Made by a program: the position numbers and the translations under genes. From the IMG/VR virus record IMGVR_UViG_3300031251_000001, positions 62,001-126,000 of that record: a stretch of 64,000 nucleotides of DNA. The stretch is one strand, 5' to 3'. Shown here piece by piece: positions 22,133-63,023 of this stretch; positions within the stretch are counted from its first letter, which is position 1; each line of letters opens with the position of its first letter. The notes under the pieces were generated by a model. It had not been told where the DNA came from, did not search any database, and was given only the letters and a program-made list of their open reading frames with translations.

Positions 22133-22148
22133 CAAAATACGTATTTTG
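22133..22148. repeat. Dispersed palindrome CAAAATACGTATTTTG, copy 2
   Basis: 16-bp perfect palindrome between a terminator and the candidate promoter. Confidence 0.95.
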
Positions 22149-22153
22149 CAACG

Positions 22154-22181
22154 AAAAAACGGCGAGGAAAACCTCGCCGTT
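22154..22181 (-). terminator. Intrinsic terminator ending the capsid operon
   Basis: AACGGCGAGG-TTTT-CCTCGCCGTT followed by TTTT. Confidence 0.85.
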
Positions 22182-22202
22182 GTCATAGTTAGATCAGCTC
22201 GA

Positions 22203-38695: not shown

Positions 38696-38715
38696 CCTTG
38701 CCTCAGTCCCTGCTG

Positions 38716-40634: not shown

Positions 40635-43600
40635 CTACCCCTTGTCTTGCAAAATCTCGACCTCATCGTGAGGATCGATGGTTCTTTGTTCTAACGCTTT
40701 TAGCACATCCTGGATGTTGCGGAAAGTACGCAACGGACGTTTGCTCTTATTGGATGTTAGCTCATAGAGCCCACCCACGTACTCCTGTGACGGCATGGCC
40801 ACTGGTGTTTTACGGTCAGTCGGGCTGATCAGGTGCTTGCTGGGGAGCATGCGTTCGTAGGTCTCTTTTGCCGCCTCTTCGGTGGCGGGCACGTGGAACT
40901 GCGAGGCGTCGCCATCGAAGTCCATGTTGAAACCCTTGAGCACCAGCGTGGGCACGTGGACGGCGTTGCCGGCCACCAGCTGCGGACGGAAGCCCATATA
41001 GCCCAGTTTGTGGAGCACCGGGGCGCGATTCATTTGGACCGGCTTTTGATCCATGACGCGGAGAAGGGAGCGGTGTGCCTCGTCATCTTGTTGGTTGATC
41101 GATTCCATGGCGTTAGCCACCGTACGACCGCGGCGAACCATGTCACGAACGATCTCTTTCTTGTAGACATCGAACGCCAATCGCTTGGGGATACCGATCT
41201 GGTCCATGTTCAAGTCAGGGTTGGGCACCACTACCGAGCGACCAACCTGGTCCACGGCGGAGCCAATGAGACGCCGTTGAACCGTGCCCATTTTAGGATT
41301 GCTTCCAAAGATATGCTGCAGAACTCCCCGTACGTTGCGCTCCTTGGACTTCTTTGTAACAGGATCTCCAAGACCCGTGACTGCCTTGAGAGCGTTGTAG
41401 AGGGTGAGATGTTCTGGTCCGACGTAGTCATCGCCCATCTCCTTGTGGAAGTCCTTCACCGCTTCGTTGGCGGAGTGGAGTTCTTTATAGAGCGGGTTGG
41501 CGTCAGCCACCATAGGAACACCTGAGCCGCCCAGTGTCGAGATGCGACGGTAAGCAGGTGGGATCACTGGGGCGGACTTCAGGGTCCAATCGCGTGGGTG
41601 CATGCCCACACGTTTGGTGTCCATCATGTAGTACAGCTTCCGAATCGCTTCATCCCGCTTGGTCTTACTACCCGACTGAAATGCTTGTTTAGCCGTCGCA
41701 ATCTCATGGTCGAGGTTAATACCTTCCAACGCTTTGACGATCGCATCAGGGCCTGTCTTGCCATTCAAGTGCTCCTTCCCGGCCAGGATGTCCTCGAACT
41801 TGCCTTGCGTCAGACCGAGGACTCGTTTGACCGGGTCTTCCATGACCGGGTTGACGAGAGGAGTAACGAGAGGAATCTTCGACCACTTCATGCCGCCATG
41901 TCCACCGGTGATCTCCGGATCGAACAGGCCACCGGGAACGGGGTCCAGGGCTTCACCTGATTTGACCGTCTCGGCGTTCTTGAGGGTGCGACCCTCAGCC
42001 AGATCCTCGACTGACTTGTTAGTCATCGCCAGGAAGTGCGTACGCTTGCCGTCCGGCACGGGATCGATGCCAGCTGCCCGGAGTTGGGCCAGATATTTCT
42101 GGTAAACGGTGGTCGTGTGCGGCTCGACCGGCTTCTGTCCACGCTGATATTGCAGCCAGTAAGTGTCATTACGCTGGCCACGAACCAGGCCCGCATCGCG
42201 GAGGACTTCATAAGCACCGTGGGAAAGGATGGCGTTCACATCCAGGAGCGAGACGCGCTTGGAGTTGGAGACGTGAGCACCGTTCTTGAGGTAGTAGCTG
42301 GCACCGTCTTCGACCGTGATGTCGTAGACCTTCTCACCGGGCCTCTTGAACCGGGTGTAGATGGTGGCGACTACGAGCGTGGCCGGCCCATAAAGGCGTT
42401 GTGAACTTTTCCGAGGAAACCGCTCATGGCCCCGGTAAAGGTCTGTCCGATCGACGTCCGCATCCGCCGAACCAAGTCGGCGGTCGGCTTTGGACCTGGC
42501 TGGTCGAGCTTCTTGAATATGCTTTGCGTCCTTTCGGGCGTGAAGGCTGGTAAGACGTACGGTCGCTGCGGGGCAGCGGCTTCCTGGCCATCGATAGGGG
42601 CGGACTGCTGAGTGGGGTCCATCGCAATAAATCTCCTGACCGGGCTGCAGCAGATTAGCAGCGATCTTCGTGTCGTGGATAAAGAACTCGTGACCGGGGG
42701 TGCATTCCACCACGGAACCATCGGTGAAAGTGATGACCACCAAGTAACGGGGAGCATCGTACTCCATCCAATCGGTGATCTCGCGGTAGACCGGAATCAT
42801 GTTCTCGTTGAGCAGGACCTTCGTGGGAACGCGAACGGCTTTCCGCTTCTTGACAATCTCACCGATCGTGTCGGAACCGAACTCGGTCCACAGCTTGGTC
42901 GTCCCGACAAAGCAGCCACCGTAACCACCCTTGGCCGGCTCGTCATCCTGGTTATAGGCCCCGCTCGAGCGGGCCTGTCCCTTGGATTCCGAAGTGTGAT
43001 GCAGTTTCATCATGAAGCGGGTGCCGGTCGCCACGCCGGGGATCTTCTGTCCTGTCTCGGGATCGGTGATCTCTTCCGAGAGCTTCATGCCGTGTTTGCC
43101 CAACTCGTTGCGGACGTACTCGTCGTGATCTTGCCCAGTGAAATCCTTCACCAGGTAGGGTTGACCTGTCTTGCGGGCGATCTTCCCCAGGCCGAGCTCG
43201 TGGGCCTGGGCAGCGTTGGTGCGGGAGATCATGCCGTTGGGGCTGAGCAGTAGCTCGAAGGGGTTGCCGTCTTTGTCGTGCGGCATCTGGCTGTCAGGAA
43301 GGATCTTCGAGATCACCCCCTTATCACCGAAACGCCCTGAGAGCTTATCCGCCTCTACAGTCGGGTGGTAGGATTTGACGATGACGACGGGGCCTTTCTT
43401 GCCCTGCTGCACGTCCACGACTTCACCATCGTGGTCATGGTCCCAGGCGACCGAGGCGTCCTGCCAGGAGTCCGACTTGCGTCGCAGGAGGCGGTTGGGA
43501 TTCATGCCCTTCTGCTTGGCGGCGACGATGAGTGGCTGACCGTGGGTGACCTTCTGGCCGACCTTGATGACGCCAGTGTCGTCCATCTTGCCGAGCTGCT

Positions 43601-45659
43601 CACGAGTGAAGCGGCCAGGGAACAGATCAGAGAAGGCCTGGCGGCCCTGCTTGGTCTTGTTGTCGACCTCCAGCTCGTGCTGGTAGGCGTGCTCTGAAGT
43701 CATCTTCCTGGCAAGAGAATCCGAGATGACCACGGCGTCGTTGTGATTAAGGCCCTTCCAGGGGACGTAGGCGGAGTAAGCATTGATGCCCATCGCCATG
43801 GTCCCGTGCTGATCGGTATAGTTGCTGCCGGCGAGAAGCTGACCCTTCTGTACGGTGCTGCCTTCCTGGACAATGGGTTCCTGGTTGAGCAGGGACTTAC
43901 GGTTGAAGGGCAGGTTCTTGTAGTAGGGCTTGATGCTGGTCGTGCCGTCCGGGTGCTGCATGTGGATTTCATCTTCCGTCACCTTCGTCACACGACCAGG
44001 CTTATCGGCCGCGACGGCTCCAAAACGATGACCCAACCATTGTTCGTAGGGCTGGTTGGTCTCCTCGTCCACGTTCTGTACGTGAGGAGCCTCGCGATGC
44101 TGGAGGGATAGCGCCTGCATGTACATGCGGGCACCCATGGAGTTTCGCTGTCCCTTGTTGGAGCTCTGGAACGGGATGGTGTTGGTCAGCGGGCTGAAGT
44201 TACGCGACCCGTGCGGGGAGACATAATCCAGCTCGGACTTCTTGGCATAGTCGAGCTCACCGTTGCGGATCACCGGCACATAATCATTCTTCGATTCCAT
44301 CGACTTGTAGAAGCCGATCGTCTTGCCGGCCAGGTCCTGGGGCGATCGCCACAGCTTCTTGCCGCTCTTGGGATCGATGAACTGGCTGTAGAGCCTGCCG
44401 TCGCTGCCTTTGCGTGAAGCAACGCTGGCAGAGAGATCGACGCCGGCCCGTTCCGATTCCGGTGTCTTGACGACATCAAGGAAGCCCAGGTGCGAGTTCT
44501 GCACCGAGCGGGCCTCCAGCGGGATGGCAGCTCCGGAGATGCCACCCTCACCCATGCGGGTGACGTTATGCAGGCGGTCAGCAAACTCAGAGGTATTGAT
44601 TTCTTCCAGGGGCTGGGCGACGCCGCTGCGCAGCAGGACGTGATCCAGTTGATGGGTCAGGGCACCCGAAGGCATGTGCTGCAGGTGGCCCGCTTTGGAC
44701 ATCTTGTAGAGGAGTTTCTTCTGCCAACCCTCAGAATCCTTGGCGATACGCTCGGCAAAGAGGTCTTCTGGCCCCAGGAACTTCTGATACTCGAGCGCGT
44801 CACGATCATCGGGTTTGGCCTCGCCCCGGTTGATCTTGATCAGCTTACTGGTGGCAGCCAGGAGCACGTCCTTGTTGAGCGTGGGGCTGACGTTGCCGAT
44901 CGTGCTCTTGTTGACGAACGGATTGACCTTGTAGCCCTGATACTTCTCGACGAGCTTGGCGATACGATCGACGCCCGGTGCCGCCAGCTCTTCTTTGGAG
45001 AGTAGCTTGTGAGACAGTCGATCAAGTGCGTCACGTTCCTTGACCCCGCGGTTGGACTGGGCGATCTCTTTGCCCCAGTGGTGTTCGATCTCGTCGTCCT
45101 TGGCTCCCATGGCGGTCAGCAGCGGCAGGAGGGGTGCGGTGGATCCGGCGATGTTGAGATGGAAGGTGCCCTTGTCGGGATCGAAGCCGATGCGGTGCGT
45201 CAGGCCTTCACCAGGAAGGATATTGAGGTAAGTCTCCAGTTCGCCGTTACCTTTGCGTCGGTTGTAGACGCCCGGTTCGAGACGCTGTTGGTTACGAACG
45301 GCGTACTTGGTCCCGTTACGCACGACGGTCCCGAAGTCGCTAAAGTGTGGCACGGTGGCAACGACTTGCTTGCGGGAGTCAACCATCTTGTCGGTGGCAT
45401 TGTCGTAGAGCTCCCACGTCCCTTCGACACGCCGGCCCAGCGATCCACGCGAGAGGATGGCCTTCTTGACCTCGCTGGGCTTGCGGTATTCAGGGTCGAT
45501 ATATTTGGGGTTGGTGAGCTTGAGCGTGTGCGTGCGATTCTTCACCGGGGGCAGATTCTGCATAGCACCGAGCACGTTGCCGTACACGTTTTTACGCAAC
45601 GCCCCAGTATCGCCGAACTCACGGAGGGTCACTCCCTCCGGGACTCCATCGAGATCCAT
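40635..45659 (-). CDS. Phage multisubunit-type RNA polymerase: beta fused to beta' N-terminal catalytic part, intein-containing
   Basis: Beta motifs 'KTPESERAG', 'DKLSGRFGDKGVI', 'RFMMKLHH'. Beta' motifs 'NRAPVLHK' and catalytic 'NMDFDGD'. Confidence 0.92.
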   Translation of the reverse strand: MDLDGVPEGVTLREFGDTGALRKNVYGNVLGAMQNLPPVKNRTHTLKLTNPKYIDPEYRKPSEVKKAILSRGSLGRRVEGTWELYDNATDKMVDSRKQVVATVPHFSDFGTVVRNGTKYAVRNQQRLEPGVYNRRKGNGELETYLNILPGEGLTHRIGFDPDKGTFHLNIAGSTAPLLPLLTAMGAKDDEIEHHWGKEIAQSNRGVKERDALDRLSHKLLSKEELAAPGVDRIAKLVEKYQGYKVNPFVNKSTIGNVSPTLNKDVLLAATSKLIKINRGEAKPDDRDALEYQKFLGPEDLFAERIAKDSEGWQKKLLYKMSKAGHLQHMPSGALTHQLDHVLLRSGVAQPLEEINTSEFADRLHNVTRMGEGGISGAAIPLEARSVQNSHLGFLDVVKTPESERAGVDLSASVASRKGSDGRLYSQFIDPKSGKKLWRSPQDLAGKTIGFYKSMESKNDYVPVIRNGELDYAKKSELDYVSPHGSRNFSPLTNTIPFQSSNKGQRNSMGARMYMQALSLQHREAPHVQNVDEETNQPYEQWLGHRFGAVAADKPGRVTKVTEDEIHMQHPDGTTSIKPYYKNLPFNRKSLLNQEPIVQEGSTVQKGQLLAGSNYTDQHGTMAMGINAYSAYVPWKGLNHNDAVVISDSLARKMTSEHAYQHELEVDNKTKQGRQAFSDLFPGRFTREQLGKMDDTGVIKVGQKVTHGQPLIVAAKQKGMNPNRLLRRKSDSWQDASVAWDHDHDGEVVDVQQGKKGPVVIVKSYHPTVEADKLSGRFGDKGVISKILPDSQMPHDKDGNPFELLLSPNGMISRTNAAQAHELGLGKIARKTGQPYLVKDFTGQDHDEYVRNELGKHGMKLSEEITDPETGQKIPGVATGTRFMMKLHHTSESKGQARSSGAYNQDDEPAKGGYGGCFVGTTKLWTEFGSDTIGEIVKKRKAVRVPTKVLLNENMIPVYREITDWMEYDAPRYLVVITFTDGSVVECTPGHEFFIHDTKIAANLLQPGQEIYCDGPHSAVRPYRWPGSRCPAATVRLTSLHARKDAKHIQEARPARSKADRRLGSADADVDRTDLYRGHERFPRKSSQRLYGPATLVVATIYTRFKRPGEKVYDITVEDGASYYLKNGAHVSNSKRVSLLDVNAILSHGAYEVLRDAGLVRGQRNDTYWLQYQRGQKPVEPHTTTVYQKYLAQLRAAGIDPVPDGKRTHFLAMTNKSVEDLAEGRTLKNAETVKSGEALDPVPGGLFDPEITGGHGGMKWSKIPLVTPLVNPVMEDPVKRVLGLTQGKFEDILAGKEHLNGKTGPDAIVKALEGINLDHEIATAKQAFQSGSKTKRDEAIRKLYYMMDTKRVGMHPRDWTLKSAPVIPPAYRRISTLGGSGVPMVADANPLYKELHSANEAVKDFHKEMGDDYVGPEHLTLYNALKAVTGLGDPVTKKSKERNVRGVLQHIFGSNPKMGTVQRRLIGSAVDQVGRSVVVPNPDLNMDQIGIPKRLAFDVYKKEIVRDMVRRGRTVANAMESINQQDDEAHRSLLRVMDQKPVQMNRAPVLHKLGYMGFRPQLVAGNAVHVPTLVLKGFNMDFDGDASQFHVPATEEAAKETYERMLPSKHLISPTDRKTPVAMPSQEYVGGLYELTSNKSKRPLRTFRNIQDVLKALEQRTIDPHDEVEILQDKG
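42264..42914 (-). mobile_element. Intein (217 aa, no homing endonuclease) in the RNAP gene
   Basis: GG|CFVGTT block A, 'ECTPGHEFF' block B, 'VYDITVE' block F and 'HVSN|S' C-terminal junction. Confidence 0.9.
42371..42622 (-). CDS. Nested 83-aa ORF inside the intein (+1 frame)
   Basis: AGGAG 10 nt before the ATG, GC-ending codon bias, and boundaries matching the intein linker. Confidence 0.6.
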   Translation of the reverse strand: MDPTQQSAPIDGQEAAAPQRPYVLPAFTPERTQSIFKKLDQPGPKPTADLVRRMRTSIGQTFTGAMSGFLGKVHNAFMGRPRS

Positions 45660-47964: not shown

Positions 47965-48957
47965 TTAGCCGAATAACTTGGGTAGCGCCAGGTTGACGAT
48001 ACCCACCGCTGCTCCGTAATTCCCCCAACTCTTGTCGGGCATCCCGGTGGCGATGTTCAGCGCTTTGCCCACCACCTTGCCCATAACGTACCCTTGTCCC
48101 GCCGCCATCGCAAGCTGACCTAGCTGATTAGCGGTCACCCAGCCTGGCGTCGCGTTGTCATCCGGGAACTGCTGAGCGGCGTGCATAACCCCCATCGTCG
48201 CTCCGGTGATCGGTGCCGGGGCCTGCCCCTGCCAGAGGGTCTGACCCAGAGCATTGACGTTGATGTCACCAGGATTAGACTGTGCGGGTTCGGCCCCCTC
48301 ATAGCCAATGGTATCCATCGCTACTTTGGGGATGGGCACATGGGGTGTCTGGTGGAAAGGCACGACCGAGGGAACTGGTTCTATCGGTTCCTGCACACCA
48401 GGCCAACCATCTGTCATGCTGTGCCCGTTAGCGTGGTTGGTCAGAGCCCACAACGCCCCAGGGGCGGCACCGAGGAGGCCACCCATCAAGGCACCATTAC
48501 GTCGCAGCCTCTTCTTGTCCCAGCCATCTGGTGTTTTGGAGGCAACCAGGGAACCGGCACCATAGCCCAGGCCCGTACCCAGGAGCCCTGAAGCGATCAT
48601 GGCAGCCAGGGGTGAGGGGGCATTGGGGATGCCAGTCGTGGAAGGCAGGAATTGAAGAGCCTCCAGCCCCTCCCGCAAGGGCCTCGACTCGGCCACCTTG
48701 ATCCAGCTGTCCTGGCGTGCCTCTTCAGCGGTGATCGGCATTTTCTGGACAGGGAGAGCTGAGCACTTGGCGAGCTTCCGCAGATAGGCTACCGGCAGAT
48801 CGGTTTGAATATCGAAGGCGACTTTGCGAGTGAGCGGGTTGGCGTAGATCCGCACCGGACCTGGTAGCAGGAAGAGGTGGGGACGCAGGCTGGCAGCCAC
48901 CGGGCGGGCGAAGGCTGCATACTCGTCGATGCGGTCGGTGATGGTGTCCCAACTCAT
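47965..48957 (-). CDS. Putative internal virion protein with glycine zippers
   Basis: 330 aa with GLLGTGLGYGAG, GGLLGAAPG and several KVA motifs. Confidence 0.65.
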   Translation of the reverse strand: MSWDTITDRIDEYAAFARPVAASLRPHLFLLPGPVRIYANPLTRKVAFDIQTDLPVAYLRKLAKCSALPVQKMPITAEEARQDSWIKVAESRPLREGLEALQFLPSTTGIPNAPSPLAAMIASGLLGTGLGYGAGSLVASKTPDGWDKKRLRRNGALMGGLLGAAPGALWALTNHANGHSMTDGWPGVQEPIEPVPSVVPFHQTPHVPIPKVAMDTIGYEGAEPAQSNPGDINVNALGQTLWQGQAPAPITGATMGVMHAAQQFPDDNATPGWVTANQLGQLAMAAGQGYVMGKVVGKALNIATGMPDKSWGNYGAAVGIVNLALPKLFG

Positions 48958-50105
48958 TTGAGGAGCCCCTCGATACGGAGGATGTCGAGGATACGCTGCA
49001 GCTGCTTGGCTACCGGGCCTTCAGCTCGCACGGCCCGATCGTCGAGGTAGACGTCAGCGTAGATCTTGTTGGAGCCGCCTTCGGGCTGGAATGGGCTGTC
49101 ATTGATGTAATCGAACTCGACGCCGGCAGCTTTAAGGTGGCTGGTGAGCAAGAGCCGATCGCTGCGAACGGTCCAGATGCAGATCGTGCAGCCCAGCTTC
49201 TTGAGGGCGTTGACCAGGATCACCATCTGTGGTTTGACGGGGCCGATCTTGGTGTTGTCGAACGGCTCCATTGTCTCGCAGAGGGTGCCGTCGACATCGA
49301 TCGCGACGATAGGTTTACGGTCGCCGGCATACTTCTGCCATCGCCGCAGGAGAGCGGCACTGGCCCGCTTGCGAAAGGCACGATCGACAAAAGGAAAAGG
49401 ATCAACCGCCAGCTTCACCAGCTCCTCCATATCGGAGAAAGTGGGGGCGACAGCAAGCTGGGAAGCAGCCTTGCGAACAAGTTTCTTCCAGCTCGCTACA
49501 AACACCGAGTCACGGTCAGTACGAACACCCCGAGCGTAGTCTTCGTACCAATTAAGCCAGGCGGTCTTGCGGCGTGTATCCAGAAGCCCGAAGCGGGCCA
49601 GATCAGAGACAGTATAGTCGGGAGTGAAGTCAAAGGCACGCTTGGCTGCCTTGCCGCCGGGGAGGAAGTCTTCTTCGCTCACCTCGGACTGGGTGTCTCC
49701 TCTTTCCAGCCACCATTCCAACTGATAGGGAGTGACGGCTACGATGCTGCCAAAGCCGGTCCAGCCTTCTTTGTAGCAGCTGAGATATGCTTCCTTGGCC
49801 TCTTGGGCGGAACCTGGTCCCAGGATGACTTTGTGCTCGTCGAATGCACCAGACTGCTTAACCTGGTTAATGATAAAGGCAACGTCGTTTTGGTATGGAT
49901 CAGAATCGATAAACACATCGACATGATCGCCATCATCGTCCGTTGATGAATCGGGAAAGTAACCGTAGTGAAGTGGGAGATCAACTCCATGACGCACCTG
50001 GCCTTTAGCATACTCCAGGGCAATAGGGATGCCCTTCCACTTGAGCTCCCTGATCGTCGGCCTGTCCTTGGCGATCTTATCCGGCATCGTTAGTTCCAGA
50101 TTCAT
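48954..50105 (-). CDS. Inorganic pyrophosphatase-like domain fused to HAD-superfamily hydrolase
   Basis: N-terminal 'HYGYF...DGDHVDVF...FDEHKVILG'. C-terminal 'IDVDGTL...IWTVR...KIYADVYLDDRA'. Confidence 0.8.
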   Translation of the reverse strand: MNLELTMPDKIAKDRPTIRELKWKGIPIALEYAKGQVRHGVDLPLHYGYFPDSSTDDDGDHVDVFIDSDPYQNDVAFIINQVKQSGAFDEHKVILGPGSAQEAKEAYLSCYKEGWTGFGSIVAVTPYQLEWWLERGDTQSEVSEEDFLPGGKAAKRAFDFTPDYTVSDLARFGLLDTRRKTAWLNWYEDYARGVRTDRDSVFVASWKKLVRKAASQLAVAPTFSDMEELVKLAVDPFPFVDRAFRKRASAALLRRWQKYAGDRKPIVAIDVDGTLCETMEPFDNTKIGPVKPQMVILVNALKKLGCTICIWTVRSDRLLLTSHLKAAGVEFDYINDSPFQPEGGSNKIYADVYLDDRAVRAEGPVAKQLQRILDILRIEGLLK

Positions 50106-50323
50106 AAGGGTGGTTGCTGAGCCCCTCGGAAACCCCTAGTACCGAGGACCTTTGCTCCGAAAAGCATTGACAGCGCACATGAGGCGTCGCGCTGTCTCCT
50201 CCGCGGGTTAAACCTAGCGTCAATCCCCGCTGTCAGCGATCAAGCCGACATCCGTGCCCGTCCGCATCCTTGCGGTCGAGCGCCTACCAATCGCGCCTGC
50301 GATTAACCCAGCAACCGACCCTC
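50106..50323 (-). ncRNA. Candidate structured RNA (~220 nt) of unknown family
   Basis: 17-bp terminal helix enclosing at least five hairpins. G-U pairs and a UUCG loop favour the minus strand. Confidence 0.6.
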
Positions 50324-50343
50324 ACGAGTCCCATTGTAACTCG

Positions 50344-51210
50344 TTAGCTAAAGAAAAGATTGTCTTCGTGCTCGGAGATGTCCATCATCTCCCTCACGGT
50401 GGAACTTGCCTTCTTCCGCACTTCCGTGTAATTCGCCACTCGACTTTTGATCGGGTAGGGATGGAGTGAGGCCATGGGAATGGCACCGAAACCATCAACG
50501 GGGAGCCGGAGGTAGTTGGCTAGGATAGCTTGAAGCTCGTTCAGGTTCAACAGCCATCGATACTGAATTAGGCAATAATCCTCGGTAGCCTGCTGGATCG
50601 TCCGTAATGTGTGATCACGTGTTGCCAGGCTGGCGTGGACGAACTCCGAACAGAGAGCGGGGTCGATTGAGACCGGCAGCAGTGGCCGCTTGGTATGACC
50701 AATCCACTTACCATAGCGTTCCCCGGTGTAGTAGCTGACGTAGCAGTCGAAGGGGTTGCGATCCACGAAGATGATGGCCACGTCTTTGGTGCGGCACCAG
50801 CGGTGGATCGAATCGGCGAGCTGCGTGTTGCGTAGCGTCTCGAACGTCAGGCGGACGCCGATGTGCGTTTCCCCGCTGATTGGGTTGGGGAAGAGTGTTT
50901 TCTCGATGTAGTTATGCAAGACCGGATTGAGTTCGATCCAGTGGTCATCATCATCAGGGTTGGCATGAGGATGGAGGGCCATTGGCGACATGCCGCACAT
51001 GCCGTACGGACGCCTGACATCCTCGGCACCGAAGTAACCATAGTGAGCCAGCATCCTGTCTCTGGCTTCTCTGTGATTGACCGCCTGGCTGTGGCATGTG
51101 AGTCCATTCTGGGTATTGAGCAGCGACGTAATCGGCCACGAGCCGCTGCGGTGCTCGCCTAACACAACGAAGTTGACCAACACCAAACTCCATTTCGGTG
51201 CGATACCCAC
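50344..51210 (-). CDS. Sulfotransferase-family protein (start uncertain)
   Basis: 5'-PSB-like 'FVVLGEHRSGS' and 3'-PB-like 'DRNPFDCYVS'. Confidence 0.65.
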   Translation of the reverse strand: MGIAPKWSLVLVNFVVLGEHRSGSWPITSLLNTQNGLTCHSQAVNHREARDRMLAHYGYFGAEDVRRPYGMCGMSPMALHPHANPDDDDHWIELNPVLHNYIEKTLFPNPISGETHIGVRLTFETLRNTQLADSIHRWCRTKDVAIIFVDRNPFDCYVSYYTGERYGKWIGHTKRPLLPVSIDPALCSEFVHASLATRDHTLRTIQQATEDYCLIQYRWLLNLNELQAILANYLRLPVDGFGAIPMASLHPYPIKSRVANYTEVRKKASSTVREMMDISEHEDNLFFS

Positions 51211-51250: not shown

Positions 51251-51291
51251 GCTAAAGAAAAACACGCCGGCCCGTACGAGGGGCCGGCGTG
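51251..51291 (-). terminator. Intrinsic terminator with TTTTCTTTAGC tail
   Basis: 11-bp stem CACGCCGGCCC/GGGCCGGCGTG then TTTTTCTTTAGC. Confidence 0.85.
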
Positions 51292-52886: not shown

Positions 52887-52973
52887 GCGGTACCTCCTAT
52901 TTGGCATCGTAACAGATCGAGCGTTGTTGCGGTTATGATCAGGTAGAGACGAACAAAATCGAGGAAGGTATCA

Positions 52974-55900
52974 ATGGGCACTTTGACAGGGCACACACCG
53001 GCAACCACGTACCCCAGCCTCATGCACATCGACCCCAACGTCGATGGGACGCTTCGCCGGATGACAGACGGTCTGGGCAACCCGTTGCCTATCCTGGTGT
53101 CGTCGACCGCTGTAGAGATCGACCAGCCATTATCGCTGACTACACTCGACATTACCACTTTAACGTCCGGCGGCGTGAACAGTTCTCTCGTCCCTTCCGT
53201 CGACAATACCTACAGCCTGGGCAGCAGCTCCAAACGCTGGGCCTACCTCTACGTCGATCACCTCGACTTTGCTGATCCTATCCCCATTGATTCGGGTGGT
53301 ACCGGGTCCACCACGGCGTACGATGCTCGTGTAGCACTACTCCCCAGCATGCTCGGGTCGGGGAACCATCTCTTCCAGGTCAACACCGGCGGCACCGACA
53401 TTGCGGTGAGCGTCATCACCGTTGATCAATTAGTCGTGACGTTGAACGATCAGACCATTGCTGGTAACAAGACCTTCACCGGCAAGACCTCTTTCGCTAC
53501 GATTCTCAGCTCCTTCATTCCGGATGCTGACAACACTTACGATCTGGGTAGTACCTCTAAACGCTGGCGTTCTGCTGACGTGGTCGGTATCGATATCTCC
53601 GGTAGTATCACCGGCAATGTGAATCCGGCAACGAGCCTGGCTTTCAACGTCGGCACGCCCACTGCGCGTTGGAACACGCTTTACGCTAATGCCGTCAACA
53701 CCAATTTCCTGGGTGTCGTTGGCTTCGTGCAGACCAACTTGTCACCCTACGTATCAGGACTTAGCCTGGGCGTCACCGCCAATCGTTGGTCCAGTGCCTA
53801 CATCGATACCCTGACTCTCACCAATCCTTTGACTGCCGCCAATGGTGGTACCGGGGCAGCCACCGCAGCCGCTCATGCTGCCTTGATGGGACCAACCAGC
53901 GGATCAGCTGCAGCTCCTTCCTTCCGCGTCCCGGTCGTAGCCGATCTTTCCGACTTCGACACCGCTGTGCGTGCCTACCGCCTGGATCAGTTCGCGGCAC
54001 CCACCGCCGACGTGTCGATGAACTCGCACAAGATCACCAACTTGGCAGTGCCTTCGGCCTCCAATGACGCGGTGAACAAGGCGTACGCTGATGGTCTGGT
54101 GACTGGCCTCATCCAGAAGGCCAGCGCTACCGTGGCTGCCACCTCGGCCCTGCCGGCTTGCACGTACGCCAATGGGACAGCGGGTGTCGGTGCCACGTTG
54201 ACGGGCAACAGCAACGGTGCTCTCACCGTGGACACCTATGCTGTTCAGGCAGGTAATTTCGTCCTGGTAGCAGGTCAGGCATCTCAGCTGCAGAACGGTG
54301 TCTACCTCGTTACCCAGGCTGGCGACGGCTCTCACCCCTTCATCCTCACCCGTCATGCTTCGATGGATGAAACCAATGAGTTCTCGGGCTCCCTGGTGCC
54401 AGTCGAAGATGCCGGCTCCGCTAATGCCAATTCACTTTGGCTCTGCACCAACACCGGCTCCCCGGTCGTGGGCACCGATGCCATCACTTTCGTGCAGCTC
54501 AACAAAGGTACTGATCTTCAGTCCGGCACCGGCATCACTATCAGTGGGAACACGGTCTCGGTCACCGGTATCCTGTCGACGTTCTATGGTTTGTCGTCTA
54601 CCGCCGGCTGGCTGCACAACAACGGGTCAGGAACACTCACCTACTCGACACCGACGCAGTCCGATGTCGGTCTCTCCAACGTCGAAAACACAGCCCTCTC
54701 GACCTGGGCCGGCACCACTAACATCACCACACTGGGGACGATCGCGACCGGCACCTGGGCTGGTACGGCGGTGGGTGTCACGCACGGCGGCACGGGCGGC
54801 ACGTCGGCCAATGCCGGCCTGAATAACCTGTTACCGTCGCAAACCGGCAATAGCGGTAAGACGCTCGTCACAGATGGCACGAATACCTCCTGGGGTGTCG
54901 GCGGCGGTTCAGTAACCAGTGTGGGTTTAGCACTTCCTTCCAGTGAGTTTGTCATCAGCGGTTCACCAGTCACGGGTAGCGGCACCCTGACAGGAGCCTG
55001 GCAGGTCCAGCTGCAGAATTACGTTTTTGCCGGCCCTTCTGCCTCTTCCTTTGCAACGCCTGGATTCCGCCTGCTTGTCAGCGGCGATATTCCGCAGACA
55101 CTGGATCACACCTGGATCACGGACTTCGACACCCAAGTTCACACGTCTCGACTAGATCAACTGGCTGTGCCGACTTCTGACGTATCGATGAACAGCCACA
55201 AGATCACTAACGTGGCGACACCGACTTCATCAGGTGACGCAGTCAACAAAAGCTATGCTGACGCGCTGGCTTTGGGTTCGATTCCCAAAATCACGGCTCA
55301 ATTGGCGACGGCCGGTGCTCTCCCTGCCTGTACCTACGCTAACGGTACGTCAGGCGTGGGTGCCACATTAACCGGTAACAGCAATGGTGCGTTGACAGTC
55401 GACGGTACGGTGGTTCAGTCCGCCTGGCGGGTTCTGGTTACCAGTCAATCGTCCGCCCTGCAAAACGGCCTCTACGACGTGACGACCGTGGGCGATGGCT
55501 CTCACCCCTTCGTGCTCACCCGCAATGCGTCGATGGATCAGAACTCGGAGTTTGCCGGTTCCTTCATTCCAGTCGAGGATGAGGGCACATCGCAAGCTAA
55601 TTCAATCTGGCTCTGTGTGACAACAGCGGCTCCTACCATAGGCACTGATCCGATCGCCTTCACCCGACTCAACAAGGCAACCGATCTGGCTGCCGGCACG
55701 GGTATTGGTATCAGCGGTAACACGGTCTCTGTGGCTGGAATCACGTTGACCTTCGCCAGCCTGGGTAATAGCTCTGGTTGGCTGCATAACGATGGGTCCG
55801 GCACACTTATCTATTCAACTCCCACGCCAACCAACCTGGGTCTGGGGAACGTGGAGAATACCGCCCTGTCGACCTGGGCAGGTACCACGAATATCACCAC

Positions 55901-58844
55901 GGTCGGTACCATCGCGACCGGCACCTGGGCCGGTACAGCGGTGGGCACCACGCATGGCGGCACCGGCGCCACGTCAGCCAATGCAGGATTTAATGCCCTG
56001 GCTCCGTCGCAGACAGGCAACTCAGGCAAGTTCCTTACCACGGATGGCACCAACACTTCTTGGGGTACCGTCTCCGGTGGCGGCGGTAGCGGCACCGTCA
56101 CCAGCGTCGGCTTGGCACTCCCGGCTGAGTTCAGCGTCAGCGGCACCCCAGTCATCAGCACTGGCACGCTTACTGGCAGCTGGGCTAACGCCACAGCCAA
56201 CCAGGTCTTCTCCGGACCTACTACGGGCAGCCCTGGTACGCCTGCCTTCCGTGCCTTGGTGGTCGCTGACATTCCGACGCTCACCTCGGCCAAGATCAGC
56301 GACTTTGACACGCAGGTTCGCACTTCGACGCTGGCACAGATGGCTGCTCCTGGTGCCGACGTCTCGATGAACAACCATAAGCTCACGAGTGTTGCCGATC
56401 CTGTTTCCTCTCAGGACGCTGCCAACAAGCAATACGTCGATATGGCGATTCAGGGGCTGAAGCAAAAGCCGACCGCCACGGTGGCCACGACTGCCGCGCT
56501 GGCTGCCTGCACCTACGGCAACGGCTCGGCAGGATTGGGTGCCACGCTGACTGGGAACAGCAACGGTGCCCTGACCGTTGATACGCACGCTGTCGCAGTC
56601 GGTGAGCGGGTGCTGGTGAAGAATCAGGTCGCTGGAGAACAAAACGGCCTCTACACCCAGACACAGTTGGGTGATGGATCGCATCCATTTATTCTGACTC
56701 GTGACATCTCTATGGATGTCAGCACCGAGTATTCCGGTGCCTTTATCCCGGTGCTGGACGTCGGTTCAGTCAACAACAATACGATCTGGCTGTGTGATAA
56801 CACTTCCACGCCCACCGTGGGCACGACGGCCATCACTTTCGTCCAGATCGCTGCGGCCGGCAGCTACACTGCCAGCACAGGCATTACTATCACTGGTTCC
56901 GCTATTTCATTAACAGCCCCTGTGACTCCAGCCCTGGGCGGTACCGGCACGACGACCGTCTTCACTTCAGGCAACATGGTTTTCGCGGGAGCGTCGGGCG
57001 TCTACACGCAGGACGCCAACTTCCACTATGACTCGACCAACCACTACCTGGTAGTTGGTACGACCGGCTCGGCCCAGGGCATTCTGCACGGTACCTCTTC
57101 AGCCGCGATTCCAGTGCTATTTGGCTACACCAATACCACATCATCTGGTCAGCTTATTGATGTCTACAATGGTGGTTCGCGTCGATTCATGTTCGACGGT
57201 TACGGGCAGCTTTACCTGAATGACATTCAGAACTCGGGCTGCAACGCAACTGGATCGCTCGCTTGTATCACTTGCCCTGCCAACGCCGGCGACAAGATCT
57301 ACCTCTATTCCAACGCTGGTAGTTCCCGCTGGGGCTTCGGGATCAGCTCCTGGACATTCAACATGTTCATGGACGGTGGCAATCCCGGTACCGGCAAGTT
57401 CACCTGGAACACGTCGCCTAGCAGCGGCAACTGCTCTGGCAACGGTACCTCCATCGCCAACCTCTACACCATTGGCACGTTTGAGCTGCTGCTCAATACC
57501 GACGCAGCCAAGGGTGTTTCGGTCAAGAACAATAGTGCCAGCTCTTCCGGCAACTGTTTCGAGATGAAGGATAGCAGTAGCAACGTCCTCTTTGCTGTGG
57601 CGGCCAAAGGTAACACCAGTCTGACACAGTTGGCCCAGACGACGGGAGCTCCGCCAACGCTACTCACGCTGACAGGTGCTGCCCACACCGGCATGACCGC
57701 CTCAACTGAGTTCATCAACGCTAACTTCAACTTCGCGCAGTCCGTGCAATTCGCTACGGGTAACATCGCCCTGCAACGCTGTGTGCTCTTCCAGGCCCCG
57801 AGCTACGCCTTCGTGGGTGCCTCGACCATCACCACGTCGGCCACCGTCTACATTGCCGGTGCCCCCAACCAGGGTTCCAGCAACACCACGACTAACCCTG
57901 TTGCCTTGATGGTGGGCAATGTCCACACCGCTGACATCGGCATGATCATCCAGGGGGCGGCCAGTGCCACTGGTGATCTCCTCCGGCTCTGGGACAGCAG
58001 CAGTGCCATCCTGGCTAAGTTTGCCGCAGCGGGTGACTTCACGCTCTCGCCTGGCGTGCGTACCACGGGATCACCGACGCACTTCACGCTGACCGGTGCC
58101 GCTCACACTTCGCTGACAGCCTCCACCGAGGCGTCAGACATTAACATCAACCTGAACCGTACTGTTCAGTTTGCCACCGGTGCTCTGACCACCCAGCGGG
58201 CGGTGCGTATTCAGGCTCCGACGTACGGGTTTGTAGCAGCCTCCACGCTCACAACTGGCGTCACCTGCGACATCAGCGGTGCCCCGGTGGCCGGCACTAA
58301 CGCTACCATCACCAACCAGATTGCCTTACGTGTCGCTGCTGGCGTTGCCAGTGGTGTTCCGCTCGTCGTCCAGGGTGCCAGCAGCCAGTCGAAAGACTTG
58401 ATGCAGATCCAGGACAGCTCGGGCACGGTAATCAACAACTGCGATAAAGACGGCTACATGTTCCCGTTTGCCATGGGCTTCAACCTGGCGGTGGGAGTGG
58501 CTGCGACCACAGGCACCAATCTGACTTGTGTGCTCCAGCTTCCCTGTGACTGTAAAATCGTCGACGTCGCGGCCTACGCTAAGACAGGGCCGACTGGTGC
58601 GGATTTGATCTTCGATCTTCTCTATCACGCTACTGACGATGCCAGTGCTACGACGATCTGGACTACCACAGGTAATCGTGTCAAGATCACGGCTGGCAAC
58701 AAGACCGGACACTCCTCGGCCTTTGATGTTTCGACGTTCGCCAAGTACGGTGTGATCGTCGCTAACATCTTCCAGGTGGGTAGCACCATCGCCGGAAAAG
58801 ACATCACTCTCACCTGCTGGTTCCGCGGCAAGGAAGCACGATAA
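52974..58844 (+). CDS. Long repeat-built fibre protein (tail or head fibre)
   Basis: 1956 aa, Thr/Gly/Ser/Ala-rich, with GGTG repeats, 'HKITN...DAVNK.Y.D' fibre motifs and three modules spaced ~390 aa apart. Confidence 0.8.
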   Translation: MGTLTGHTPATTYPSLMHIDPNVDGTLRRMTDGLGNPLPILVSSTAVEIDQPLSLTTLDITTLTSGGVNSSLVPSVDNTYSLGSSSKRWAYLYVDHLDFADPIPIDSGGTGSTTAYDARVALLPSMLGSGNHLFQVNTGGTDIAVSVITVDQLVVTLNDQTIAGNKTFTGKTSFATILSSFIPDADNTYDLGSTSKRWRSADVVGIDISGSITGNVNPATSLAFNVGTPTARWNTLYANAVNTNFLGVVGFVQTNLSPYVSGLSLGVTANRWSSAYIDTLTLTNPLTAANGGTGAATAAAHAALMGPTSGSAAAPSFRVPVVADLSDFDTAVRAYRLDQFAAPTADVSMNSHKITNLAVPSASNDAVNKAYADGLVTGLIQKASATVAATSALPACTYANGTAGVGATLTGNSNGALTVDTYAVQAGNFVLVAGQASQLQNGVYLVTQAGDGSHPFILTRHASMDETNEFSGSLVPVEDAGSANANSLWLCTNTGSPVVGTDAITFVQLNKGTDLQSGTGITISGNTVSVTGILSTFYGLSSTAGWLHNNGSGTLTYSTPTQSDVGLSNVENTALSTWAGTTNITTLGTIATGTWAGTAVGVTHGGTGGTSANAGLNNLLPSQTGNSGKTLVTDGTNTSWGVGGGSVTSVGLALPSSEFVISGSPVTGSGTLTGAWQVQLQNYVFAGPSASSFATPGFRLLVSGDIPQTLDHTWITDFDTQVHTSRLDQLAVPTSDVSMNSHKITNVATPTSSGDAVNKSYADALALGSIPKITAQLATAGALPACTYANGTSGVGATLTGNSNGALTVDGTVVQSAWRVLVTSQSSALQNGLYDVTTVGDGSHPFVLTRNASMDQNSEFAGSFIPVEDEGTSQANSIWLCVTTAAPTIGTDPIAFTRLNKATDLAAGTGIGISGNTVSVAGITLTFASLGNSSGWLHNDGSGTLIYSTPTPTNLGLGNVENTALSTWAGTTNITTVGTIATGTWAGTAVGTTHGGTGATSANAGFNALAPSQTGNSGKFLTTDGTNTSWGTVSGGGGSGTVTSVGLALPAEFSVSGTPVISTGTLTGSWANATANQVFSGPTTGSPGTPAFRALVVADIPTLTSAKISDFDTQVRTSTLAQMAAPGADVSMNNHKLTSVADPVSSQDAANKQYVDMAIQGLKQKPTATVATTAALAACTYGNGSAGLGATLTGNSNGALTVDTHAVAVGERVLVKNQVAGEQNGLYTQTQLGDGSHPFILTRDISMDVSTEYSGAFIPVLDVGSVNNNTIWLCDNTSTPTVGTTAITFVQIAAAGSYTASTGITITGSAISLTAPVTPALGGTGTTTVFTSGNMVFAGASGVYTQDANFHYDSTNHYLVVGTTGSAQGILHGTSSAAIPVLFGYTNTTSSGQLIDVYNGGSRRFMFDGYGQLYLNDIQNSGCNATGSLACITCPANAGDKIYLYSNAGSSRWGFGISSWTFNMFMDGGNPGTGKFTWNTSPSSGNCSGNGTSIANLYTIGTFELLLNTDAAKGVSVKNNSASSSGNCFEMKDSSSNVLFAVAAKGNTSLTQLAQTTGAPPTLLTLTGAAHTGMTASTEFINANFNFAQSVQFATGNIALQRCVLFQAPSYAFVGASTITTSATVYIAGAPNQGSSNTTTNPVALMVGNVHTADIGMIIQGAASATGDLLRLWDSSSAILAKFAAAGDFTLSPGVRTTGSPTHFTLTGAAHTSLTASTEASDININLNRTVQFATGALTTQRAVRIQAPTYGFVAASTLTTGVTCDISGAPVAGTNATITNQIALRVAAGVASGVPLVVQGASSQSKDLMQIQDSSGTVINNCDKDGYMFPFAMGFNLAVGVAATTGTNLTCVLQLPCDCKIVDVAAYAKTGPTGADLIFDLLYHATDDASATTIWTTTGNRVKITAGNKTGHSSAFDVSTFAKYGVIVANIFQVGSTIAGKDITLTCWFRGKEAR

Positions 58845-60690: not shown

Positions 60691-60993
60691 TCATTTAGAC
60701 GGGTAAGGTCTGCCGCCCAGATTGTTGATAGCGTTATCAGGCGTGACGAAATCAGCCTTGTTACCACCCACCATGATGGGCGGCATAGTGATACCCATGA
60801 CTCCCACCCAGATACGACCCGTTCGATTGACTTCATCAAGTTCTTCCTGGGTTAGCTTCCATGAGGAAATAACCGCAGCAAAACCTTGAATCAAACGACG
60901 TGAGATACACAACGGGTCACAGTCGTCAGCCCTGACGTCGTTAGGACGACCCAAGACTGCTTCAGACTCGTCGAACGACGCGGCGACTGCCAT
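60691..60993 (-). CDS. Hypothetical protein
   Basis: 100 aa with 'SSWKLTQEELDEVNRTGRIWV'. Confidence 0.65.
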   Translation of the reverse strand: MAVAASFDESEAVLGRPNDVRADDCDPLCISRRLIQGFAAVISSWKLTQEELDEVNRTGRIWVGVMGITMPPIMVGGNKADFVTPDNAINNLGGRPYPSK

Positions 60994-63010: not shown

Positions 63011-63023
63011 GGCGTAGCTGAAA

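What the first reader, a model, noticed from the sequence alone, without database searches (positions are those of the whole stretch)
50106..50323. Unannotated ~220-nt multi-branched RNA heading the internal-protein/RNAP block
Seen (minus strand): 5' GAGGGUCGGUUGCUGGGU pairs with 3' GCUCAGCAACCACCCUU (17 bp, one bulge, G-U pairs). It encloses hairpins AAUCGC/GCGAUU, CCGCA/UGCGG, GCGGG/CCCGC, GACAGCGC/GCGCUGUC, UGCUU-UUCG-GAGCA and CCUCGG/CCGAGG. Two loops carry the self-complementary CUAG (CUAGGUUU and CUAGGGGUUU). A TACAAT hexamer lies just upstream, and the helix ends at the next ATG. I see no tRNA, tmRNA or RNase P signature. Inference: a novel phage ncRNA or cis-regulatory leader, and the CUAG loops could form kissing or oligomer contacts.
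Basis: partly seen in the sequence, partly recalled or inferred. Interest (0 to 1): 0.72.

Follow-up and report, generated by a model that had tools for sequence, protein, structure and literature searches.

The report
Conserved structured RNA in jumbo phage
A 218-base multi-hairpin RNA fold just ahead of an enzyme gene in an uncultured giant phage is real and is kept by matching mutations in a distant relative, so it is a genuine new structured RNA; its job, most likely control of the genes behind it, is not yet known.

Summary
Window 50323-50106 (minus strand) folds into a 17-bp closing helix around seven hairpins (MFE -107.6 kcal/mol, z -5.35). It is the most structured of 65 intergenic gaps in the 214-kb genome. 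It matches no Rfam family, tRNA or tmRNA.

One relative lineage (L002/L003) has flanking proteins only 50-62 % identical and about 47 % of aligned RNA positions changed. It keeps the same architecture:
- Of 36 alignable pairs, 20 are identical, 2 changed on one side, 14 are double compensatory and 0 are broken.
- The outer closing helix has an entirely different sequence but is still fully paired.
- None of 400 simulated neutral mutants folded as stably as the relative.

The sense strand has 11-13 G·U pairs and the antisense 1, so the structure acts as RNA in the operon's sense. Frame-breaking indels exclude coding.

The element ends 15-18 nt before a weak ribosome-binding site. That site belongs to an InPase/HAD gene heading the block with the phage's multisubunit RNA polymerase. 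A recurring TAC(A/T)AT motif precedes the element.

My best reading is a cis-acting leader, at moderate confidence. An excised stable ncRNA remains possible. The CUAG kissing-loop idea is only weakly supported: one loop stays palindromic (CCGG) and the other does not (CCAG). Only two distinct sequences exist and no RNA-seq was listed.

The parts
50333..50338 (-). -10-like hexamer TACAAT (gTTACAAT), a possible promoter that would start transcripts 1-3 nt before P1
   Evidence: Read directly. The relative has TACTAT 3 nt before its P1, overlapping the upstream stop codon, so it keeps its place relative to the RNA and not to the ORF. TAC[AT]AT is about 2.7-fold enriched in intergenic DNA, and TTACAA is the most enriched hexamer upstream of genes. 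There is no sigma-70 -35 match. Promoter function is inferred.
50306..50323 (-). P1 5' strand (RNA positions 1-18)
   Evidence: It pairs with 50122-50106: 17 bp, one bulge, 3 G·U. The relative has a 14 + 6 bp P1. Its proximal part covaries with the window's, and its distal part has an unrelated sequence that is fully paired.
50288..50305 (-). H1 hairpin UAAUCGC-AGGC-GCGAUUG, stacked directly on P1
   Evidence: It is nearly invariant in the relative, with 1 compensatory pair, 2 conserved U·G pairs and the same AGGC loop.
50254..50283 (-). H2 hairpin (apex CCGCA-AGGA-UGCGG), a variable region
   Evidence: The relative has a single hairpin where the window has H2 and H3, with a 17-nt deletion.
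50231..50250 (-). H3 hairpin UGUCGGC-UUGAUC-GCUGACA, a variable region
50203..50230 (-). H4: basal stem GCGGG/CCCGC, and apical GAC-GCUAG-GUU inside the conserved block UGACGCYAGGUUKA
   Evidence: The basal stem has 2 compensatory pairs and the apex is invariant except CUAG to CCAG.
50197..50202 (-). Junction J4/5, GGAGGA: an invariant, unpaired Shine-Dalgarno-like GGAGG in the central multiloop
   Evidence: It is unpaired in both independent folds and invariant in alignment A3. Its role is inferred only.
50169..50196 (-). H5 hairpin GACAGCGC...GCGCUGUC with conserved apical loop CGCCYC
   Evidence: Five of 8 alignable pairs are double compensatory and none is broken.
50153..50166 (-). H6 hairpin UGCUU-UUCG-GAGCA, optional
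   Evidence: It is absent from the relative (11-nt deletion).
50123..50148 (-). H7 hairpin UCCUCGG-UACUAGGGGUUU-CCGAGGG
   Evidence: Four of 7 pairs are double compensatory. The loop GGGG is conserved, and CUAG in the window corresponds to CCGG in the relative.
50106..50122 (-). P1 3' strand (RNA positions 202-218)
50085..50105 (-). Linker with a weak RBS (UGGAA) and the conserved start codon ATG at 50087-50085 of the downstream gene
   Evidence: The N-terminus from Met7 aligns with the relative's protein, and gene callers start there. UGGAA lies 7-8 nt before the ATG in both phages. Most genes in the genome use AGGAG-type sites. The linker has no significant structure of its own.
48954..50087 (-). 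Downstream gene: N-terminal InPase domain (PF18823) and C-terminal HAD-like phosphatase region
   Evidence: Pfam 2.2e-28. PHROG hits include minor head and virion proteins and a phosphoheptose-isomerase-like family. The orthologue P0005 is 62 % identical.
50344..51210 (-). Upstream gene: sulfotransferase-like protein
   Evidence: A profile search found 181 relatives. Some of them hit Pfam Sulfotransfer_3 or Sulfotransfer_1. The orthologue P0003 is 50 % identical.
51263..51291 (-). Intrinsic terminator upstream of the sulfotransferase-like gene, which bounds the transcription unit
   Evidence: The relative has a terminator in the same place with the identical tail TTTTTCTTTA.

Best explanation
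The element is a compact RNA domain that folds on its own: P1 closes a junction of 5-7 helices. It is transcribed in the sense of the operon and acts in cis as the leader of the mRNA. That mRNA begins with the InPase/HAD gene and runs into the multisubunit RNA-polymerase block.

Shown:
- The fold exists.
- Selection maintains it at the RNA level on the sense strand.
- It ends 15-18 nt before a conserved weak ribosome-binding site.
- There is no room for a promoter between it and that site, so any mRNA for the downstream gene that starts upstream must carry it.

Inferred:
- Transcripts start at the conserved TAC(A/T)AT motif, so the 5' end is locked into P1.
- The invariant apical and junction blocks form a tertiary core bound by a factor, either a protein or a small ligand. 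These blocks are H1 with its AGGC loop, UGACGCYAGGUU, the unpaired GGAGG, the CGCCYC loop and the GGGG loop.
- That core sets how well the weak start site directly behind it is translated, and how long the transcript survives.
For: - Fold stability: z is -5.35 in the window and -6.93 in the relative, and the gap is the most structured of 65 in the genome.
- Covariation: of 36 alignable pairs, 20 are the same, 2 changed on one side, 14 are double compensatory and 0 are broken. The distal P1 has a new sequence but stays paired.
- Divergence: about 47 % of aligned positions differ, yet none of 400 neutral mutants folded as stably as the relative.
- Strand: 11-13 G·U pairs on the sense strand against 1 on the antisense.
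- Context: same orientation as all neighbouring genes. P1 ends 18 nt (window) or 15 nt (relative) before the conserved ATG, with a conserved UGGAA.
- Weak start site: the SD is weak compared with the genome norm.
- Promoter-like motif: a -10-like motif holds its position relative to the RNA and recurs in the genome.
- No terminator follows the element.
- It is single-copy.
- Conserved operon frame, with the same terminator upstream of the preceding gene.
- Precedent: giant phages have positionally conserved structured 5'-UTR RNAs (PMC11512511).
Against: - No transcript data exist, and no RNA run was listed.
- Only two distinct sequences are known, so the covariation cannot be tested with R-scape-type statistics.
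- No expression platform was found. The linker and early coding region have ordinary folding energy (z 0.0 and +1.2), and no alternative SD-sequestering helix is evident.
- The element is larger and more ornate than most protein-binding leaders.
- Other InPase-domain genes lack such a leader, so the link to this gene class rests on one clade.
- A closing helix that joins the 5' and 3' ends is also typical of stand-alone stable RNAs.
Confidence: 0.45

Rival explanations
1. It is a stand-alone stable ncRNA. The long P1 helix, 17-20 bp and stacked on H1, is cut by RNase III or a similar enzyme, as in rRNA processing stems. This releases a compact RNA of about 190-200 nt that acts in trans. It might act as a homo-oligomer through the palindromic H7 loop, or as a scaffold or decoy for a phage or host protein.
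For: - A closing helix joins the 5' and 3' ends, and P1 continues directly into H1.
- The apical loops and junction are highly conserved, beyond what pairing requires.
- The H7 loop palindrome is kept through two changes, CUAG to CCGG.
- No terminator follows the element, so release would need processing.
- Natural ornate RNAs that form multimers are known (bioRxiv 10.1101/2024.12.08.627333, listed).
Against: - The second CUAG loop is not palindromic in the relative (CCAG).
- A 4-nt palindrome is a weak contact, and its retention has a chance probability of roughly 0.25.
- The element sits tightly against the next gene's RBS in both phages.
- No transcript data exist.
- There are no tRNA neighbours as for GOLLD or ROOL, and no Rfam match.
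Confidence: 0.27
2. It is a processive antitermination or RNAP-modifying RNA, like HK022 put or the Bacillus EAR element. The nascent structured RNA would bind the transcribing polymerase at the head of a very long operon of co-oriented genes and make it resistant to termination.
For: - It lies close to a putative promoter, at the head of a gene array of more than 50 kb on one strand.
- It is intercistronic after the first gene of the unit, as EAR is (my own knowledge of EAR, not tested here).
- The operon encodes RNAP subunits.
Against: - No sense-strand intrinsic terminator was found in the 18 kb downstream. Sites on the other strand occur at the chance rate.
- No Rfam match to known antitermination RNAs.
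- It is far larger than put RNAs.
- The termination signals of this phage's own RNAP are unknown, so the terminator test is incomplete.
Confidence: 0.08
3. It is a DNA-level element, with the inverted repeats acting in the DNA. Candidates are a replication origin, a packaging or recombination site, a remnant of a small mobile element with terminal inverted repeats, or a degenerate intron.
For: - The antisense strand also folds far better than shuffles (z -7.2), as any set of inverted repeats would.
- P1 resembles terminal inverted repeats.
Against: - 11-13 G·U pairs exist only on the sense strand, and five of them are conserved. They would be A·C mismatches in the complementary strand or in a cruciform.
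- Changes pass through G·U intermediates.
- The element is single-copy and sits at the same syntenic site in both phages.
- The flanking ORFs are complete, separate genes with their own stop and start, so nothing is interrupted.
- No Rfam match to group I or group II introns.
Confidence: 0.04
4. It is a chance fold of GC-rich spacer DNA, or a small unannotated protein gene.
For: - The genome is 59 % GC, and several other gaps reach z of -4 to -5.
- A 48-aa ORF overlaps the element.
Against: - The fold is conserved through 14 double compensatory changes with none broken.
- None of 400 neutral mutants folded as stably as the relative.
- The indels of 17 and 11 nt are not multiples of three.
- The homologous stretch is read in different frames in the two phages, and no peptide is shared.
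Confidence: 0.02

Closest known systems
Riboswitch aptamers built on a multi-helix junction closed by P1 (lysine five-way and FMN six-way junctions, cobalamin)
   Same: - P1 closes a junction of 5-7 helices.
- Stems covary while junction and loop nucleotides stay invariant.
- There is a possible loop-loop contact: H5 loop GCCYC with H7 loop GGGG.
- It lies in a 5' UTR, in sense, directly ahead of a start site.
   Different: - No match to any riboswitch model in Rfam.
- No recognisable expression platform.
- Known from only one phage clade and one gene context.
- Ligand binding is untested.
5'-UTR-derived structured sRNAs of giant phages (201phi2-1 sRNA005 and the phiKZ gp182 leader; PMC11512511)
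   Same: - Jumbo phage with its own multisubunit RNAP.
- A structured RNA conserved by position in the 5' UTR of a late gene.
- Function unknown.
   Different: - Those sRNAs arise by premature termination, whereas this element has no terminator at its 3' end.
- The phage clade is different: the RNAP is only about 30 % identical to any cultured phage.
- Sequence relatedness could not be tested because I held no sequences of those sRNAs.
- This element is larger and multi-branched.
RNase III processing stems (rRNA precursor stems; T7 intercistronic R sites; the rplL-rpoB spacer of E. coli)
   Same: - A long duplex forms between sequences flanking a structured RNA.
- It is intercistronic, in an operon that contains RNAP genes.
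   Different: - P1 is 17 bp (14 + 6 in the relative), at the short end for RNase III.
- The conserved interior is much more elaborate than a processing site needs.
- Cleavage is untested.
phi29 packaging RNA (pRNA, RF00044)
   Same: - A phage-encoded RNA.
- A 5'/3' closing helix with a helical junction.
- Loops that could make intermolecular pairs.
   Different: - No Rfam match even at E <= 10.
- Different junction topology and size.
- The genome is a 214-kb jumbo phage, not a phi29-like podovirus.
- Only one loop keeps self-complementarity.
Ornate large RNAs associated with phages or prophages (GOLLD, ROOL, raiA, OLE)
   Same: - A complex multi-stem RNA of unknown biochemical function.
- Homo-oligomer formation through loop contacts is a live hypothesis.
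   Different: - No Rfam match.
- It is 2-4 times smaller than GOLLD or ROOL.
- There are no neighbouring tRNA genes.

Membership tests
Any Rfam 15 family (riboswitches, ribozymes, pRNA, 6S, RNase P, tmRNA, HEARO/omega RNA, GOLLD/ROOL/raiA, EAR and the rest) | Covariance-model score at or above the family's gathering threshold | tested here: not met
   There were no matches in the whole window at gathering score. At E <= 10 over 49800-50700 there were only two chance hits outside the element, snR76 and BcKCsr7, both far below threshold.
tRNA / tmRNA | Cloverleaf or tmRNA architecture detected by ARAGORN | tested here: not met
   No genes were found in the window.
Riboswitch (generic) | Conserved aptamer: P1-closed junction, covarying stems, invariant junction and loop nucleotides, sense 5'-UTR position | tested here: met
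Riboswitch (generic) | Expression platform: a terminator, or an SD/AUG-sequestering alternative helix that competes with P1 | tested here: inconclusive
   No terminator follows P1. The linker and start region fold no better than shuffles. A platform in which P1 itself is the switch cannot be excluded.
Riboswitch (generic) | Specific ligand binding that changes structure or expression | not testable with these tools
   This needs in-line probing, ITC or reporter assays.
Group I / group II intron | Interrupts a gene whose exons join into one reading frame, with a catalytic core recognised by intron models | tested here: not met
   The flanking ORFs are separate genes, each with its own stop codon, RBS and start, in both phages. 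There is no Rfam intron match.
phi29-type pRNA | Two loops with conserved intermolecular complementarity, in a phi29-like genome | tested here: not met
   Only the H7 loop stays self-complementary (CUAG to CCGG). H4 changes from CUAG to CCAG. The genome is a 214-kb phage with a multisubunit RNAP.
Retron msr-msd ncRNA | An ncRNA flanked by inverted repeats, with an adjacent reverse transcriptase gene | tested here: not met
   The neighbours are a sulfotransferase-like gene and an InPase/HAD gene. No RT domain was found.
Processive antitermination RNA (put, EAR) | Terminators downstream in the same operon that are read through | tested here: not met
   No sense-strand terminator-like site lies between 32000 and 50200. 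The caveat is that this phage RNAP's own termination signals are unknown.
RNase III processing stem | A duplex of roughly two helical turns formed by the flanks of the released RNA, cleaved by RNase III | tested here: inconclusive
   P1 is 17 bp stacked on the 7-bp H1 in the window, and 14 + 6 bp stacked on a 9-bp H1 in the relative. Cleavage cannot be tested here.
Giant-phage 5'-UTR-derived sRNAs (PMC11512511) | Produced by premature termination within the 5' UTR | tested here: not met
   There is no terminator-like site at or after the 3' end of the element. Homology to those sRNAs was not tested.

The most novel reading that the evidence does not exclude
The element is the founding member of a new functional RNA class in uncultured jumbo phages. 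One possibility is a ligand- or protein-sensing aptamer that gates translation of the injected-enzyme and virion-RNAP operon, perhaps by presenting the invariant junction GGAGG to the ribosome next to a weak start site. The other is an excised RNA that self-associates through its palindromic H7 loop, as recently seen for ornate RNA-only assemblies.
Probability: 0.25. Interest if true: 0.8.

Novelty: new variant of a known kind. Interest (0 to 1): 0.52.

Why it matters
Structured RNAs of this size and complexity, with a six- to seven-way junction, invariant loops and covarying stems, are usually riboswitches, ribozymes or ribonucleoprotein scaffolds.

This one sits at the entry to the operon that encodes a jumbo phage's own RNA polymerase and an InPase/HAD enzyme of the type found in virion or polyvalent proteins. 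It could therefore reveal how such phages time or dose the proteins they package.

It is short enough (about 205-218 nt) to synthesise, and two natural variants are available. Structure probing, oligomer tests, cryo-EM and reporter assays are therefore feasible even though the phage is uncultured.

The main limit is that only two distinct sequences exist in the collections I could search, and there is no expression data.

Tried and rejected
Homologue searches that found nothing further:
- blastn against GenBank phages gave no match.
- Single-protein scans of IMG/VR with both flanking genes and with the RNAP found no relatives.
- A family-profile scan of IMG/VR found none.
- The metagenome scan returned only the window's own contig and the known relative.
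- Exact-motif scans of IMG/VR gave 24 loci. All were chance matches to single hairpins when screened with model R1.
- A composite three-motif pattern gave 0 hits in IMG/VR.
- The same pattern gave 18 hits in GC-rich bacterial genomes. None matched R1, and none carried an Rfam family at the site.
- R1 found no second copy in the phage's own genome.
- The lineage L004 has the upstream gene but a different, AT-richer downstream region with no R1 match. That contig is cut off at 1255 bp.

Context checks that were negative:
- Other InPase-domain genes (L032, L033 and one JGI contig) have no comparable upstream gap and no R1 match.
- The equivalent regions of Salmonella phage Arash and Vibrio phage D69 have different gene order and no R1 match.
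- The exhaustive profile search with the upstream protein showed only that it is a sulfotransferase-like family. It gave no new syntenic lineage.

Expression and variation:
- No RNA sequencing run was listed.
- Four DNA runs hold the same phage with identical sequence, so they add no variation.

Analyses that did not work as planned:
- The MAFFT and CM alignment leaves P1, H3, H4 and H7 out of register, so its pair counts understate conservation. I replaced it with a loop-anchored helix correspondence.
- A fixed-phase sliding-window scan missed the element because P1 needs both ends in the window. I replaced it with a per-gap analysis.
- The z-score does not tell the strands apart. The G·U count does.
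- The apical motifs H1 and H4 do not recur in the genome beyond chance, so there is no sign of a regulon operator.

Not done or not available:
- The supplements of the IMG/VR structured-RNA screen (PMC10690425) are not held as text. Whether that screen already lists this element could not be checked.
- I did not run an RNA dimer prediction. The tool gives no verdict for RNA, and the claim is not strong enough to justify the job.

Full report
**Setting.** The window is bases 62001-126000 of a 214,229-bp IMG/VR virus record from a rhizosphere metagenome (contig Ga0265327_10000075), about 59 % GC. The finding lies in a 238-nt gap between two minus-strand genes.
- The upstream gene (50344-51210) has no direct Pfam or PHROG hit. 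A profile search found 181 relatives, and some of those match Pfam sulfotransferase families. I therefore call it sulfotransferase-like.
- The downstream gene (48954-50087/50105) has an N-terminal InPase domain (PF18823, 2.2e-28) and a HAD-like C-terminal part. Its PHROG hits include minor head and virion structural proteins.
- Further downstream on the same strand lie a beta/beta'-N RNA polymerase fusion (40635-45659) and a beta'-C subunit (34994-38695).
- The nearest cultured phages share only about 30 % identity in the RNAP: Salmonella phage Arash and Vibrio phages D69 and D181. This is a deep, uncultured jumbo-phage lineage.

**The observation.**
- The closing helix P1 has 17 bp, one bulge and three G·U pairs.
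- It encloses seven hairpins, H1-H7.
- CUAG occurs in the H4 and H7 loops. TACAAT lies 9 nt upstream of P1, and an ATG follows directly after P1.
- The fold is -107.6 kcal/mol against -82.7 ± 4.65 for shuffles (z -5.35).
- I called genes crudely and folded every intergenic gap of at least 120 nt. This gap ranks first of 65.
- Rfam 15 gives nothing at gathering score across the window, and nothing relevant at E <= 10 around the element. ARAGORN finds no tRNA or tmRNA.

**Conservation.** Searching 5.8 billion proteins with the two flanking proteins found one syntenic relative lineage.
- It is a 9.6-kb ENA contig (L002) and a 2.8-kb JGI contig (L003). Their spacer sequences are identical.
- The flanking proteins are 50 % and 62 % identical to the window's.
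- The relative's 221-nt gap folds into the same closed multi-branch architecture (-108.9 kcal/mol, z -6.93).

A loop-anchored, helix-by-helix correspondence of the two independent folds gives 36 alignable pairs:

| Class | Pairs |
|---|---|
| Identical | 20 |
| Changed on one side through G·U | 2 |
| Changed on both sides, pairing kept | 14 |
| Broken | 0 |

- The double changes fall in H5 (5), H7 (4), H4 (2), proximal P1 (2) and H1 (1).
- The distal part of P1 has an entirely different sequence in the two phages and is fully paired in both: GAGGGUCGGUU/CAACCACCCUU in the window and AUUGGGCAGGCGAG/CUCGCCUGCCCAAU in the relative.
- The relative lacks H6 (11-nt deletion) and has one hairpin where the window has H2 and H3 (17-nt deletion). 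Optional peripheral stems around a conserved core are typical of real structured RNAs.
- The two elements differ at about 47 % of aligned positions. I mutated the window's sequence without constraint to that divergence, and none of 400 mutants reached the relative's folding energy per nucleotide (mean -76.6, best -99.8, against -107.7).
- With only two distinct sequences the evidence is pairwise rather than phylogenetic, but it is strong.

**RNA or DNA, and which strand.** Both strands beat shuffles, as any set of inverted repeats must.
- The sense-strand folds contain 11 and 13 G·U pairs, and the antisense folds contain one each.
- Mirroring the sense structure onto the antisense strand loses 11-13 pairs and 22-27 kcal/mol.
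- Five of the G·U pairs are conserved in both phages.
- The structure is therefore selected as RNA, in the orientation of the operon.
- Coding is excluded. The indels are not multiples of three. The most conserved stretch is read in different frames by the only sense ORFs in the two phages, and they share no peptide.

**What is conserved beyond pairing.** These blocks are nearly invariant:
- H1 with its AGGC loop (UUARUCGC-AGGC-GCGAYUGGU);
- the H4 apex (UGACGCYAGGUUKA);
- an unpaired GGAGG in the junction between H4 and H5;
- the H5 loop (CGCCYC);
- AGGU before H7;
- GGGG in the H7 loop.

This pattern of covarying stems with fixed loops and junctions is what tertiary cores or binding sites look like. 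The H5 loop (GCCUC or GCCCC) could pair with the GGGG of the H7 loop in both phages. There is no covariation to test that.

- The H4 loop becomes CCAG in the relative, which is not self-complementary.
- The H7 loop becomes CCGG, which still is.
- Keeping a 4-nt palindrome through two changes is only weak evidence, with a chance probability of roughly 0.25.

**Link to transcription and translation.** The transcription unit is framed the same way in both phages.
- An intrinsic terminator with the identical tail TTTTTCTTTA precedes the sulfotransferase-like gene.
- No terminator lies between that gene and the element, or after the element.
- A TAC(A/T)AT hexamer lies 9 nt (window) or 3 nt (relative) before P1.
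- In the relative the hexamer overlaps the upstream stop codon, so it keeps its position relative to the RNA and not to the ORF.
- gTTACAAT recurs at several intergenic sites, and TTACAA is the most enriched hexamer upstream of genes. A promoter that starts transcripts at the foot of P1 is plausible but unproven.
- P1 ends 18 nt (window) or 15 nt (relative) before the conserved start codon, with a conserved UGGAA as the only Shine-Dalgarno-like sequence. Most genes in this genome use AGGAG-type sites.
- There is no room for a promoter between the element and the start. Any mRNA for the downstream gene that starts upstream must carry the element.
- The linker has no structure of its own, so no classical expression platform is visible.
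- No sense-strand terminators occur in the next 18 kb. This argues against an antitermination role, as far as host-type terminators are relevant.

**Reach of the family.** Model R1 (245 positions, 72 pairs) finds only the window (263.8 bits) and L002/L003 (191 bits). It finds nothing in the following:
- the rest of the genome;
- 24 IMG/VR loci recovered by exact-motif scans;
- the third lineage of the upstream gene, L004, whose downstream region differs;
- contexts of other InPase genes;
- Salmonella phage Arash and Vibrio phage D69;
- 18 chance pattern hits in GC-rich bacterial genomes.

No RNA run was listed. Other DNA runs hold the same phage with identical sequence.

**Interpretation.** I am about 90 % confident that this is a real, selected, structured RNA element on the sense strand. 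What it does is inferred.
- Cis-acting leader: 0.45. It is tightly and conservedly placed against a weak start site, oriented with the operon, has a promoter-like motif at its foot, is single-copy and has no terminator. This favours a leader that binds a factor and sets translation or stability of the InPase/HAD and RNAP operon.
- Excised, stable, trans-acting RNA, possibly self-associating: 0.27. This is the main rival, because P1 joins the two ends and the interior is unusually ornate.
- Antitermination: 0.08.
- DNA-level element: 0.04.
- Chance or coding: 0.02.

**Comparison with known systems.** The element resembles junction-type riboswitch aptamers in architecture. It resembles the positionally conserved 5'-UTR sRNAs of giant phages in context (PMC11512511). 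It resembles rRNA-type processing stems in its closing helix. It is not a member of any of these by the features I could test (see the membership table). I rate it a new RNA family within a known kind, structured phage leader or ncRNA elements. Interest is moderate: the element is solidly real and experimentally tractable, but only two sequences are known and there is no functional readout.

Noticed in passing
window 50344-51210 (-): The gene upstream of the RNA is a phage-encoded sulfotransferase-like protein with GExRSG and VDRNPFD..S motifs. A profile search found 181 relatives of about 260 aa, and some of them match Pfam Sulfotransfer_3 or Sulfotransfer_1. It has no direct Pfam or PHROG hit of its own.
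   Followed up: partly
window 51263-51291 (-) and L002 5891-5914 (+): A strong intrinsic terminator sits upstream of the sulfotransferase-like gene. It is conserved in position in the relative and has the identical T-tail TTTTTCTTTA, although the stem sequences differ.
   Followed up: partly
window 40635-45659 (-) and 34994-38695 (-): The multisubunit RNA polymerase is encoded as a beta + beta'-N fusion (1674 aa) plus a separate beta'-C protein (1233 aa). The best cultured relatives are only about 30 % identical: Salmonella phage Arash and Vibrio phages D69 and D181.
   Followed up: partly
window 50197-50202 (-): An invariant, unpaired GGAGG sits in the central junction of the RNA, while the adjacent gene's own ribosome-binding site is only GGAA. 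The structure might present a displaced Shine-Dalgarno sequence. This is speculative.
   Followed up: partly
whole genome; examples at window 50333-50338 (-), and outside the window at genome 142420, 144878, 156855, 179354: The motif gTTACAAT / TGTTAC(A/T)AT recurs in intergenic regions, and TTACAA is the most enriched hexamer upstream of genes. It may be a phage promoter element resembling an extended -10.
   Followed up: partly
window 19015-19182, 22044-22202, 38696-38922; genome 177508-178315 and 5077-5244 (outside the window): Other intergenic gaps fold well below shuffled controls (z -4.2 to -5.5). This used crude gene calls and only 30 shuffles. They may hold terminators or further structured RNAs.
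   Followed up: no
window 52974-58844 (+): A 1956-aa protein on the opposite strand carries repeated head-decoration-like domains (PHROG 2647, three stretches). It diverges from the minus-strand operon at about 52907-52974.
   Followed up: no
window 60962-63232 (-): A large (756-aa) C5 cytosine DNA methyltransferase (Pfam PF00145, PHROG 116).
   Followed up: no
L004 949-1255: A third lineage of the sulfotransferase-like gene (51 % identical) is followed by a different, AT-richer multi-hairpin region (z -2.8) with no match to the RNA model. The contig ends at 1255, so it is unclear whether a diverged element or a different gene follows.
   Followed up: partly
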